A model generated the notes under the pieces. That model was not told where the DNA came from. It searched no databases and saw nothing but the letters and a program-made list of their open reading frames with translations. Made by a program: the position numbers and the translations under genes. 64,000 bases of DNA, taken from contig CDROCS010000882.1 in assembly GCA_977020255.1 (NCBI GenBank), positions 62,001 to 126,000 on the forward strand. Reading direction: 5' to 3'. Origin of the DNA: Obrimoposthia wandeli (taxonomy: Eukaryota). Below are positions 51,919 to 54,394 of this stretch, piece after piece; positions within the stretch are counted from its first letter, which is position 1, and every line of letters begins with the position of its first letter.

Positions 51919-52713
51919 GTGCGGAGTAACCTTGTGTTCATAGATTCCCATTGTCATTTAGACCGTTTAAAACTCGAAGATTTTGACAATAATTTAGATA
52001 ATGTCATCAATGCCGCCTTAACAGCAAAGGTCAATACCTTATTATGTGTCAGCGTTACCATAGAAGAATTTCCGGCTATGGCAGAAAAAACAGCCAAGTA
52101 CGATAATGTTTGGCTAACTTGCGGCGCGCATCCGTTAAATCAAGATGACGAAATCGATCCAGAACAGTTAAGTCAACTAGCGACACACCCTAGAGTTATC
52201 GCTATTGGTGAAACTGGTTTAGATTATTTTTATGCACCAGAAACTAAAGCGGTACAACTTGATTCTTTTCGTAAACATGTTCGTGTTGCTAACCAGTTAA
52301 ACAAACCCTTGATTATTCATACGCGTGATGCCCAAGAAGACACCTTAGCCATGCTAAGAGAAGAGAACGCAGCAAACGTTGGCGGAATTTTACATTGCTT
52401 TACCGAAAGTTGGGAAATGGCCGAACAAGCCATTGCGATGGGTTTTTATATTTCTTTTTCAGGCATTGTAACCTTTAAAAATGCTGCTGCGCTCAGAGAC
52501 GTAGCCAAAAAAGTACCTGCAGATCGCTTTTTAATTGAAACTGACGCACCCTATTTAGCGCCCGTACCGCATCGTGGTAAGCAAAACCAACCTGCTTACG
52601 TAGTTGAAGTGGCCAAGCACCTTGCGAGTATTCGCGGGACATCGGTTGAGGAAATTGCTCAGCAATCAAGTGAGAACTTTCACCGTTTATTTCCAATGAC
52701 TCAAACAGATTGA
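51919..52713 (+). CDS. TatD-family (YcfH-like) hydrolase; start may be GTG at 51934
   Basis: FIDSHCHLD, IGETGLDY, IIHTR, LHCF, ETDAPYLAP. Confidence 0.93.
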   Translation: MRSNLVFIDSHCHLDRLKLEDFDNNLDNVINAALTAKVNTLLCVSVTIEEFPAMAEKTAKYDNVWLTCGAHPLNQDDEIDPEQLSQLATHPRVIAIGETGLDYFYAPETKAVQLDSFRKHVRVANQLNKPLIIHTRDAQEDTLAMLREENAANVGGILHCFTESWEMAEQAIAMGFYISFSGIVTFKNAAALRDVAKKVPADRFLIETDAPYLAPVPHRGKQNQPAYVVEVAKHLASIRGTSVEEIAQQSSENFHRLFPMTQTD

Positions 52714-52738
52714 TTTTATAGAGAGAATATTTATAGGC

Positions 52739-52773
52739 AAAAAACAGCCCAAAACTACTGCTAGTTTCGGGCT
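52739..52773 (-). terminator. Minus-strand intrinsic terminator with no annotated minus-strand gene
   Basis: agcccgaaacta-gcag-tagttttgggct-gtttttt on the minus strand. Confidence 0.75.
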
Positions 52774-52915
52774 AAGGGAATGGCTCAAAAAGAGATGAGC
52801 CTGCGCTAATAAACTGTCAAATTTATCGAACGGTCAATAATAAACACAACAACACTTAAACATCAATTCCTCTGCTAAGAGGCTAGCGAGCAACAGGTGG
52901 ATAACTTACCCGTTG
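52739..52915 (-). ncRNA. Candidate trans-acting sRNA (about 175 nt) with GcvB-R1-like GU-rich seed
   Basis: Minus-strand TTGCAT-16-TACACT promoter, two 5' hairpins, GTGTTGTTGTGTTT at 52855-52842, 12-bp terminator with U tract. Confidence 0.55.
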
Positions 52916-53164
52916 AATTAAGTGTAGTGTAAGCTTTTATAAATGCAAAGTTAATTTTTCTTAGTTTATCTTTTTGATATTTAAATGATTGTTTTTTTGT
53001 TTGATCCCTGAGGTTACTTAACTTAAAAACGGTTTATGTATCACTTGTCTACTATTTTTACTGGCCTTTGGCTGTATTTACCGTGCATAACTCGACTAGG
53101 TAATATGAGTTTATTGTGTCATGATATTTCTCATTAATAAAAATGAAAACAGAAGAGATCTGAT

Positions 53165-54394
53165 TTGTTAAATCGTATTTGGAGTGGCTTTTTCTTCGTT
53201 GCCTTTATTTCCTCTATTGTGCAGTGGCTGGTGTTTGACCAAGTATTGGTTTTTGAAGAAATGGTTACAGCCATTTTTGATATGTCTCGGGTCACTGTTG
53301 AAATTGCTATTGGCTTAATTGGGATTTTAAGTTTTTGGCTAGGCATGATGAAAATAGCTGAGCATGCTGGTCTTATTGATAAACTCGCACAATTTATTTC
53401 TCCGTTATTTGTTCGTCTTATGCCTGGCGTGCCAAAGGGTCATCCCGCGATAGGTTCAATGACTATGAACTTGTCAGCAAATTTTCTAGGATTAGACAAC
53501 GCTGCCACACCGCTTGGTTTAAAAGCCATGCAAGATTTACAATCGCTAAATCAAAAAAAAGACACCGCTTCTAATGCGCAAATACTTTTTTTAGTACTCA
53601 ATACCTCGTCAGTAACGTTATTTCCGGTCACTGTTTTCGTTTATCGCGCCCAACAAGGCGCGCAAAATCCCACTGATGTTTTTGTGCCGATAATATTAGC
53701 AACATTTGCCTCGACTCTCGTCGGATTATTTACGGTGGCATTCGTGCAAAAAATTAAAATTGCTCAGCAGGTTATTTTACTTTATTTATCGGCCGGCATT
53801 GCCCTCATTGGTGGTGTTGTTGTTTATTTTAGTACCTTAAGTACACAGCTGTTGGCGCAACAATCTTCTTTGATGGGAAATTTGTTAATATTTAGTACGT
53901 TGATCAGTTTTATATTTTTCGCCTTAAAACGTAAGGTTAATGTTTATGACAGTTTTATTGAAGGCGCTAAACAGGGCTTTGATACGAGTATAAAGATTAT
54001 TCCCTACCTGTTAGCTATGTTGTGTGCAATCGGGGTATTTAGAGCCAGCGGTGCTTTAGATATTCTGGTGGACGGTATACGACAACTTGTTTTATTTTTT
54101 AATGGTGATATCCGCTTTGTTGATGCTTTACCTACTGCATTTATGAAGCCTTTAAGTGGCTCAGGTGCCAGAGCTATGATGATTGAAACCATGAACACTC
54201 ATGGCGCTGATTCATTTGCTGGTCGTTTGGCTTCGATTGTACAAGGCTCGACAGAAACTACATTTTACGTGCTTGCGGTTTATTTCGGCTCAGTTGGCAT
54301 TCGTTACTCTCGTCATGCTTTAGCTTGTGGACTGATTGCTGATGTGGCAGGTATAACCGCAGCCATTGGCGTTTGTTATTGGTTTTTTGGTTAA
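53165..54394 (+). CDS. Fused SpmA/SpmB nucleoside-recognition (Gate) membrane protein
   Basis: ANFLGLDNAATPLGLKAM, KPLSGSGAR, QGSTETTFYVLAVYFGSV. Confidence 0.9.
   Translation: MLNRIWSGFFFVAFISSIVQWLVFDQVLVFEEMVTAIFDMSRVTVEIAIGLIGILSFWLGMMKIAEHAGLIDKLAQFISPLFVRLMPGVPKGHPAIGSMTMNLSANFLGLDNAATPLGLKAMQDLQSLNQKKDTASNAQILFLVLNTSSVTLFPVTVFVYRAQQGAQNPTDVFVPIILATFASTLVGLFTVAFVQKIKIAQQVILLYLSAGIALIGGVVVYFSTLSTQLLAQQSSLMGNLLIFSTLISFIFFALKRKVNVYDSFIEGAKQGFDTSIKIIPYLLAMLCAIGVFRASGALDILVDGIRQLVLFFNGDIRFVDALPTAFMKPLSGSGARAMMIETMNTHGADSFAGRLASIVQGSTETTFYVLAVYFGSVGIRYSRHALACGLIADVAGITAAIGVCYWFFG

What the first reader, a model, noticed from the sequence alone, without database searches (positions are those of the whole stretch)
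52739..52948. Unannotated antisense-oriented sRNA between tatD and spmAB with a GcvB-R1-like seed
Seen: a strong terminator whose U tract is on the minus strand although both neighbours are plus-strand; a sigma70-like promoter about 175 nt upstream; 5' hairpins (caacgggt/acctgttg, cctct/agagg); single-stranded GUGUUGUUGUGUUU. Recall: the same 14-mer is in the E. coli GcvB R1 seed, which pairs with CA-rich translation enhancers of amino-acid transport mRNAs, but gcvB is normally beside gcvA, which is not here. Inference: a relocated GcvB homologue or a convergent Hfq sRNA.
Basis: partly seen in the sequence, partly recalled or inferred. Interest (0 to 1): 0.7.

Follow-up and report, generated by a model that had tools for sequence, protein, structure and literature searches.

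The report
Colwellia SdsR small RNA, not GcvB
The minus-strand element between the tatD-like gene and the spmAB-like gene is the Colwellia copy of SdsR/RyeB, a well-known stress-induced regulatory small RNA, probably with a longer front end, and its 14-base match to E. coli GcvB is peculiar to this strain and a 98%-identical relative, so the finding is largely ordinary.

Summary
There is a strong minus-strand terminator (52774-52739), a promoter about 175 nt upstream, two 5' hairpins, and GUGUUGUUGUGUUU (52855-52842), which is identical to part of E. coli GcvB region R1.

The GcvB interpretation does not hold. Rfam places the 3' 100 nt in SdsR/RyeB (RF00111, 46.6 bits, cut-off 38), and GcvB gives no match even at E=10. 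The same RNA lies convergently behind the tatD/ycfH gene in Shewanella, Ferrimonas, Thalassotalea and Colwellia. It was found in 107 of 121 genomes sampled from the same GTDB family.

In 21 Colwellia-group sequences the best-conserved block is TTGCAT-16 nt-C-TACACT-TAA, a sigma-S-type promoter like that of E. coli sdsR. It predicts a transcript of about 175 nt starting at 52914. That is hairpin 1, a conserved UUGCUCGC, hairpin 2, an A/U-rich C-poor linker, then the SdsR core (UUAGCGCAGGCUC, stem-loop, terminator).

The 14-mer sits in the variable linker. It is absent from every relative except a 98%-identical genome (13 of 14 bases), and it is not predicted to be single-stranded.

No transcript data could be obtained. 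Verdict: a new member of a known family, possibly a long 5' variant. Interest is low.

The parts
52943..52948 (-). -35 hexamer TTGCAT of the conserved distal promoter
   Evidence: Read. TTTGCATTT is nearly invariant in 21 Colwellia-group sequences.
52918..52927 (-). Sigma-S-type extended -10: C(-13) TACACT TAA
   Evidence: CACTACACTTA is nearly invariant in 21 sequences. It has the same CTAYNCTTAA layout as the E. coli sdsR promoter CTATTCTTAA. The role of C-13 is from PMC3333887.
52914..52914 (-). Predicted transcription start (A, seventh base after the -10); not mapped experimentally
   Evidence: Inferred from promoter geometry. Hairpin 1 begins at this base.
52892..52914 (-). 5' hairpin 1 (AACGGGU / ACCUGUU, 9-nt loop)
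   Evidence: kept in 13 of the 14 closest sequences with at least 5 different stem sequences; 78% of cells paired, 2 pairs changed on both sides.
52886..52893 (-). Conserved motif UUGCUCGC between the hairpins; candidate lineage-specific seed
   Evidence: GCUCGC is present in 16 of 21 Colwellia-group sequences, in Thalassotalea and in other long-form family members. A seed function is inferred.
52869..52882 (-). 5' hairpin 2 (CCUCU UAGC AGAGG)
   Evidence: the stem sequence differs between relatives but the hairpin is kept.
52825..52868 (-). Variable A/U-rich, C-poor linker; likely Hfq-binding or RNase E entry region
   Evidence: Composition over 14 sequences is U 45%, A 30%, G 18%, C 7%. The sequence is poorly conserved. 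The function is inferred by analogy with Salmonella SdsR processing (PMC5137417).
52842..52855 (-). GUGUUGUUGUGUUU, identical to part of E. coli GcvB R1; found only in this strain and, at 13 of 14 bases, in a 98%-identical relative
52800..52824 (-). Conserved single-stranded core AAAUUUGACAGUUUAUUAGCGCAGG; UUAGCGCA is the universal SdsR seed
   Evidence: AGCGCA is invariant from Colwellia to Shewanella and Ferrimonas. It aligns to the UUAGCGCACGGCUC consensus of RF00111. Seed role is from PMC5137417.
52782..52801 (-). SdsR stem-loop 2 (GGCUCA ... UGAGCC)
   Evidence: 97% of cells paired, 2 pairs changed on both sides.
52739..52774 (-). Rho-independent terminator: 13-bp stem plus U tract
   Evidence: 97% of cells paired, 5 pairs changed on both sides.
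52740..52838 (-). Extent of the Rfam RF00111 (SdsR_RyeB) match
   Evidence: 46.6 bits, gathering score 38.
51919..52713 (+). TatD-family hydrolase gene (ycfH-type, after tmk, holB and pilZ); convergent with the sRNA and the conserved synteny anchor
   Evidence: Pfam PF01026, E=9e-87. The same arrangement is seen in relatives.
53165..54394 (+). Gate-domain (SpmA/SpmB-like) membrane protein gene downstream
   Evidence: Pfam PF07670.

Best explanation
The element is the Colwellia orthologue of SdsR (RyeB). SdsR is the sigma-S-dependent, Hfq-associated trans-acting small RNA first described in E. coli and Salmonella.

Shown here by sequence:
- The 3' ~100 nt (52838-52740, minus strand) carry the family's conserved seed UUAGCGCA(C)GGCUC, stem-loop 2, the pyrimidine-rich spacer and the terminator.
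- The gene sits in a position conserved across Shewanella, Ferrimonas, Thalassotalea and Colwellia, convergent with and just behind the tatD/ycfH gene.
- The only deeply conserved promoter lies about 112 nt upstream of the seed. It is a sigma-S-type element (C at -13, TACACT, TAA).
- RpoS and Hfq genes are present in close relatives.

Inferred:
- Transcription starts near 52914 when RpoS is active (stationary phase or stress). The primary RNA is about 175 nt, with two extra 5' hairpins flanking a conserved single-stranded UUGCUCGC.
- RNase E cuts in the A/U-rich linker, as it does in Salmonella SdsR, and releases a short form with the universal seed near its 5' end.
- Both forms pair with target mRNAs through Hfq and repress them. 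UUGCUCGC may act as a lineage-specific additional seed.

The GcvB-identical 14-mer is a strain-level variant of the variable linker. It is not a conserved seed.
For: - RF00111 match at 46.6 bits against a cut-off of 38.
- RF00111 lies in the same place behind ycfH in Shewanella, Ferrimonas, Thalassotalea and Colwellia loci.
- 107 of 121 sampled genomes of the GTDB family have one copy.
- 17 of 22 Colwellia genomes match the 226-nt unit, 12 of them over nearly its full length.
- The promoter block TTTGCATTTATAAAAGCTTACACTACACTTA is nearly invariant in 21 sequences, while the linker varies.
- The E. coli sdsR promoter has the same CTAYNCTTAA form. C-13 is known to confer RpoS dependence (PMC3333887).
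- Hairpins 1 and 2, stem-loop 2 and the terminator are kept with changes on both sides. 87% of cells are paired against 29-54% in slid controls, and 11 pairs have double changes.
- In the wider family the CTACACT box sits 35 to 105 nt upstream of the AGCGCA core, so a variable-length 5' domain is normal for this RNA.
- RpoS and Hfq are found over curated cut-offs in three Colwellia genomes.
- Two seeds and RNase E processing are documented in Salmonella (PMC5137417).
Against: - No transcript evidence exists. The one metatranscriptome found holds contigs of a 90-95% relative over neighbouring genes but none over 52576-53679. Contigs cannot show absence.
- The start site is inferred only.
- A window-specific sigma-70-like site (TTGATG-18-TATTAT, 52866-52837) could give a ~95-nt RNA instead.
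- RNAalifold did not recover the 5' hairpins on the MAFFT alignment.
- The synteny differs from the yebY synteny described for enterobacteria.
- The Rfam score is moderate, and the first 30 model positions align without real similarity.
Confidence: 0.78

Rival explanations
1. A short, E. coli-like SdsR of about 95 nt is made from a proximal promoter (TTGATG-18-TATTAT, 52866-52837). The 14-mer would then lie in the promoter spacer and never be transcribed. The conserved upstream block would be a separate regulatory site or a second promoter.
For: The promoter scan finds this site at 9 of 12 matches. The Rfam model begins at 52838. TAnnnT elements recur around -33 from the seed in several relatives.
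Against: The proximal site is not conserved, even in the closest genera-level relatives. It lacks the C at -13. The region upstream of it keeps two hairpins through compensatory changes, which points to selection at the RNA level. The distal sigma-S-type box is nearly invariant and sits exactly 7 nt before hairpin 1.
Confidence: 0.14
2. One reading: a relocated GcvB homologue, or an sRNA whose GU-rich 14-mer works as a GcvB-R1-like seed on CA-rich sites of amino-acid transporter mRNAs.
For: The 14-mer is identical to E. coli gcvB bases 75-88. No Rfam GcvB reaches the cut-off in 22 Colwellia genomes, although a gcvA orthologue of 67-68% identity is present. The niche could therefore be open.
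Against: There is no RF00022 match even at E=10. The gene is not beside gcvA. No R2-like ACUUCC motif is present (read). The 14-mer is absent from all relatives except one 98%-identical genome with 13 of 14 bases, and relatives have A/U-rich filler there. Its predicted unpaired probability is only 0.28. A single low-complexity match noticed after the fact is weak evidence.
Confidence: 0.04
3. The RNA acts mainly in cis as one half of an SdsR/RyeA-type antisense pair. Read-through from the convergent tatD/ycfH gene, or a plus-strand promoter, would give the antisense partner, and the two RNAs would destroy each other.
For: No plus-strand terminator follows ycfH before the sRNA. RF00101 (RyeA) matches the plus strand in several relatives above the cut-off. 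The RyeA-SdsR interplay is documented in E. coli (PMC6610125).
Against: The RyeA model largely mirrors SdsR, so these hits are not independent. In the window it scores 27.2 bits against a cut-off of 37. SraC/RyeA is poorly conserved and judged non-essential for SdsR control (PMC3333887). This reading would add to the trans-acting role rather than replace it.
Confidence: 0.1

Closest known systems
SdsR / RyeB (Rfam RF00111) of E. coli and Salmonella
   Same: Conserved seed UUAGCGCA(C)GGCUC, stem-loop 2, pyrimidine-rich spacer and Rho-independent terminator. Sigma-S-type -10 with C at -13 and a TAA extension. An A/U-rich single-stranded stretch lies upstream of the seed, where RNase E cuts in Salmonella. 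RpoS and Hfq are present in the host lineage.
   Different: The predicted primary transcript is about 175 nt rather than about 103 nt. It has two extra 5' hairpins and a lineage-specific UUGCUCGC motif, and the 5' domain shows no similarity to the enterobacterial stem-loop 1 seed. The gene lies behind tatD/ycfH rather than behind yebY. The seed lacks one C (GCAGGCUC rather than GCACGGCUC). Nothing has been tested experimentally in this lineage.
GcvB (Rfam RF00022)
   Same: A 14-nt G/U-rich stretch is identical to part of E. coli R1. Both are sRNAs of the Hfq-dependent type with a Rho-independent terminator.
   Different: There is no covariance-model match, no gcvA neighbour and no R2 region. 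The stretch is not conserved in relatives and is not predicted to be single-stranded.
ArcZ and RprA (other processed RpoS-network core sRNAs)
   Same: A long primary transcript whose most conserved seed lies in the 3' part and is exposed by RNase E processing. This analogy is drawn in PMC5137417.
   Different: There is no sequence relationship, and processing here is inferred only.

Membership tests
SdsR/RyeB (RF00111) | Covariance-model score at or above Rfam's gathering score | tested here: met
   46.6 bits against 38, full model 1-100, at 52838-52740 on the minus strand.
SdsR/RyeB (RF00111) | Conserved single-stranded seed UUAGCGCACGGCUC upstream of stem-loop 2 | tested here: met
   UUAGCGCAGGCUC at 52809-52797. 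AGCGCA is invariant across Colwellia, Thalassotalea, Shewanella and Ferrimonas.
SdsR/RyeB (RF00111) | Stem-loop 2 plus a Rho-independent terminator, with covariation | tested here: met
   97% of cells are paired in both helices, with 2 and 5 pairs changed on both sides.
SdsR/RyeB (RF00111) | Sigma-S-type promoter (C at -13, extended -10) | tested here: met
   C-TACACT-TAA at 52927-52918 is nearly invariant in 21 sequences and has the same form as E. coli CTATTCTTAA. It lies about 70 nt further from the seed than in E. coli.
SdsR/RyeB (RF00111) | RpoS-dependent accumulation in stationary phase, and Hfq binding | not testable with these tools
   Only the presence of rpoS and hfq genes in relatives could be shown. 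RNA data were uninformative.
SdsR/RyeB (RF00111) | Length of about 100 nt with 5' stem-loop 1 carrying the first seed | tested here: inconclusive
   The predicted start at 52914 gives about 175 nt with a different 5' domain. The start site is not mapped.
SdsR/RyeB (RF00111) | Position downstream of yebY (enterobacterial synteny) | tested here: not met
   Here and in Shewanella, Ferrimonas, Thalassotalea and Colwellia the gene lies behind tatD/ycfH. The yebY synteny was described only for enterobacteria, so it does not define the family outside them.
GcvB (RF00022) | Covariance-model match | tested here: not met
   No RF00022 match in 52600-53250 at E up to 10, and none in the whole window at the gathering score.
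GcvB (RF00022) | Divergent neighbour of gcvA | tested here: not met
   The neighbours are a TatD-family gene and a Gate-domain gene. In relatives gcvA lies 68 kb (G001) to about 800 kb (G012) away.
GcvB (RF00022) | Conserved G/U-rich R1 seed | tested here: not met
   The 14-mer is present but is not conserved in any relative beyond a 98%-identical genome.
GcvB (RF00022) | Conserved R2 region (ACUUCCUGU) | tested here: not met
   There is no CUUCC in 52948-52739 on the minus strand (read; consensus).

The most novel reading that the evidence does not exclude
In Colwelliaceae, SdsR would have grown a structured 5' domain of about 70 nt that carries its own conserved seed (UUGCUCGC), which would make it a three-module regulator. 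In this strain the linker would also have drifted into a GcvB-R1-identical G/U tract that lets SdsR repress amino-acid transporter mRNAs. The genus keeps gcvA but has no recognisable GcvB, so this would be partial functional replacement of one core sRNA by another.
Probability: 0.06. Interest if true: 0.6.

Novelty: new member of a known kind. Interest (0 to 1): 0.25.

Why it matters
The finding corrects a tempting misreading. An exact 14-base match to a famous seed turned out to be strain-level noise inside a known RNA.

It also extends SdsR, usually treated as an enterobacterial core sRNA, to cold-marine Colwellia and its relatives (Shewanella, Ferrimonas, Thalassotalea and the GTDB family of Colwellia). 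There it has a different conserved gene neighbourhood (behind tatD/ycfH).

It suggests that the 3' seed module is ancient, while the 5' module varies in length (the sigma-S box lies 35 to about 170 nt from the seed) and carries lineage-specific motifs. If confirmed by transcript mapping, this would be a useful case of modular sRNA evolution. It would not be a new kind of system.

Tried and rejected
- **Own-genome searches.** Rfam GcvB and SdsR found a true GcvB next to gcvA on contig C1209 and a second SdsR on C5499. The assembly is 1.35 Gb and holds 41 TatD-like genes from many organisms. These hits therefore cannot be assigned to the window's bacterium, and I dropped them as evidence.
- **Transcript evidence.** The single run search gave one marine metatranscriptome (9% of words) and one probable source DNA run. 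Laid contigs cover neighbouring genes of a 90-95% relative but not the intergenic region. This is uninformative in either direction.
- **RNAalifold on the MAFFT alignment.** It recovered only the 3' helices. Per-sequence folding and a hand-given structure were needed for the 5' hairpins.
- **GcvB-like RNA upstream of Colwellia gcvA.** There is no Rfam hit at E up to 1 and no G/U-rich R1-like tract. An 88-aa ORF lies there instead.
- **Literature.** Searches for SdsR in Shewanella, Pseudoalteromonas, Colwellia or Alteromonadales found nothing specific.
- **Small ORF hypothesis.** AUG at 52863 preceded by GAGGA would encode MFKCCCVYY. I rejected it as a conserved feature because the AUG is missing in several relatives.
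- **Target prediction.** I did not attempt it for the seeds, because no annotated genome of this strain is available to the tools.

Full report
**What is there**

The 451-bp gap between a plus-strand TatD-family gene (51919-52713, PF01026) and a plus-strand Gate-domain SpmA/B-like gene (53165-54394, PF07670) was read on both strands. The TatD-family gene is the last of a tmk-holB-pilZ-ycfH-type row.

The minus strand carries a 13-bp G+C-rich hairpin followed by a T run (52774-52739). GTGTTGTTGTGTTT is at 52855-52842 and occurs once in the window.

I fetched the annotated E. coli K-12 gcvB. The same 14 bases are there, at bases 75-88 of the RNA.

**What it is**

A scan of the whole window against Rfam gives exactly one match at curated thresholds. 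It is SdsR_RyeB (RF00111) on the minus strand at 52838-52740, at 46.6 bits against a cut-off of 38. A relaxed scan of the gap (E up to 10) adds only the mirror-image RyeA model on the plus strand (27.2 bits, below its cut-off of 37) and noise. GcvB does not appear at all.

The alignment shows the family's signature. That is UUAGCGCA-GGCUC, stem-loop 2, the CAUUCCCU spacer and the terminator.

**Source organism**

The TatD-family protein is 90% identical to one from an uncultured Colwellia MAG. The next hits are Colwellia and Thalassotalea.

The assembly that holds the window is 1.35 Gb and contains 41 TatD-like genes on many contigs. It is a mixture of organisms. The genuine GcvB-gcvA pair on contig C1209 and a second SdsR on C5499 cannot be credited to this bacterium.

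**Conservation**

In loci fetched through the TatD-family protein, RF00111 lies in the same place: convergent with and just behind the gene. This holds in three Shewanella, Ferrimonas, Thalassotalea and four Colwellia-group genomes.

In a sample of the GTDB family that contains Colwellia, 107 of 121 genomes have one match. In the genus, 17 of 22 genomes match the 226-nt unit. Twelve match over nearly its whole length, and one is 98% identical.

**The promoter and the 5' end**

I aligned 21 Colwellia-group sequences. The best-conserved block is not in the RNA body. It is TTTGCATTTATAAAAGCTTACACTACACTTA, that is TTGCAT (52948-52943), 16 nt, then C-TACACT-TAA (52927-52918).

The E. coli sdsR promoter, read from the annotated record, is CATCTATTCTTAAAG followed by the start site. 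Both fit CTAYNCTTAA. The C at -13 is the base shown to give RpoS dependence in Salmonella (PMC3333887).

The seventh base after the -10 is A52914, and hairpin 1 starts exactly there. The distance from the -10 to the seed is 91-136 nt in 19 of the 21 sequences; the other two are 66 and 169 nt.

In other genera of the family the same CTACACT box lies 35 to 105 nt upstream of the AGCGCA core. In E. coli it lies 48 nt upstream. A 5' domain of variable length therefore seems normal for this RNA, and Colwellia is near the long end.

**Structure**

The predicted transcript has these parts, 5' to 3':
- hairpin 1 (52914-52892)
- a conserved UUGCUCGC (52893-52886)
- hairpin 2 (52882-52869)
- an A/U-rich, C-poor linker (7% C against 19% overall)
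- the conserved AAAUUUGACAGUUUAUUAGCGCAGG
- stem-loop 2
- the terminator

Thirteen of the 14 closest sequences keep hairpin 1. They do so with at least five different stem sequences, and hairpin 2 likewise.

On a 13-sequence alignment with a structure I supplied, 87% of cells pair, against 29-54% when partners are slid. Eleven pairs show changes on both sides. Compensatory change in the two 5' hairpins argues that this region is selected as RNA, and so that it is transcribed. RNAalifold alone found only the 3' helices.

**The 14-mer**

The 14-mer lies in the variable linker. The 98%-identical relative has 13 of 14 bases. All others have unrelated A/U-rich sequence there.

In the folded full transcript its mean unpaired probability is 0.28, because it pairs with the SdsR core. 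I conclude that the match to GcvB R1 is a chance or very recent feature of a low-complexity stretch, and not a seed under selection.

No Colwellia genome (0 of 22) has a GcvB above Rfam's cut-off, although gcvA orthologues of 67-68% identity are present. Nothing GcvB-like lies beside them.

**How it most likely works**

Shown:
- family membership by sequence and structure
- a conserved sigma-S-type promoter
- rpoS and hfq genes in three close relatives, above curated cut-offs

Inferred from the enterobacterial work (PMC3333887 and PMC5137417):
- RpoS-dependent transcription in stationary phase or stress
- Hfq binding
- RNase E cleavage in the A/U-rich stretch upstream of the most conserved seed
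- repression of several mRNAs by base pairing

The conserved UUGCUCGC is a candidate extra seed specific to the lineage. Other genera of the family carry CUUCUCCC at the corresponding place.

**What could not be shown**

Transcription itself could not be shown. The one RNA data set found is a marine metatranscriptome stored as contigs. It covers neighbouring genes of a 90-95% relative but not 52576-53679. This says nothing either way.

A window-specific proximal promoter-like site (52866-52837) leaves room for a short form. In that case the 14-mer would not be transcribed at all.

**Comparison and novelty**

This is SdsR, a known family, detected by the public model at its curated threshold. 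I found no paper describing it in Alteromonadales.

The tatD/ycfH synteny differs from the yebY synteny reported for enterobacteria. The longer 5' domain with its own conserved motif is a modest, untested variation.

I rate it a new member of a known kind, with low interest.

Noticed in passing
G000 contigs C1209:28949-29138 (L001) and C5499:41514-41608 (L002): The assembly holding the window is a 1.35-Gb mixture with 41 TatD-like genes. It also holds a canonical GcvB (81 bits) beside a 302-aa putative gcvA (LysR-type; Colwellia orthologues are 67-68% identical), and a second, higher-scoring SdsR (71 bits). Both probably come from other bacteria.
   Followed up: partly
L148:680-1500 (genome G012, upstream of gcvA); genus search: Colwellia genomes keep a clear gcvA orthologue (67-68% identical) but none of 22 has a GcvB above Rfam's cut-off. 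The gcvA upstream region holds an 88-aa ORF with a hydrophobic N-terminal stretch rather than an sRNA with a G/U-rich tract.
   Followed up: partly
L098, about 60 nt upstream of its RF00111 stem-loop 2: One family member carries three tandem copies of a 22-nt unit (CACAAGTTACAGTTTATTAGCG). The SdsR seed region is therefore triplicated within one gene.
   Followed up: no
Loci L084-L113 and L012: The 5' domains of SdsR in this family fall into at least two motif classes. GCUCGC or ACUCGC occurs in the Colwellia/Thalassotalea-like long forms. CUUCUCCC occurs in many shorter forms. This suggests lineage-specific first seeds joined to one universal second seed.
   Followed up: partly
window 52863-52834 (minus strand): Inside the predicted sRNA, an AUG preceded by GAGGA opens a 9-codon ORF (MFKCCCVYY) that spans the 14-mer. 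A similar AUGUUUAGA start is seen in some relatives, but the AUG is missing in others, so it is probably not a conserved peptide.
   Followed up: partly
window 52814-52841 (plus strand): A promoter-like site CTGTCA-16-AATAAT on the plus strand overlaps the conserved UUUGACAG of the sRNA. It could start a transcript antisense to the sRNA's 5' domain, running toward the Gate-domain gene. No plus-strand terminator follows the tatD-like gene.
   Followed up: no
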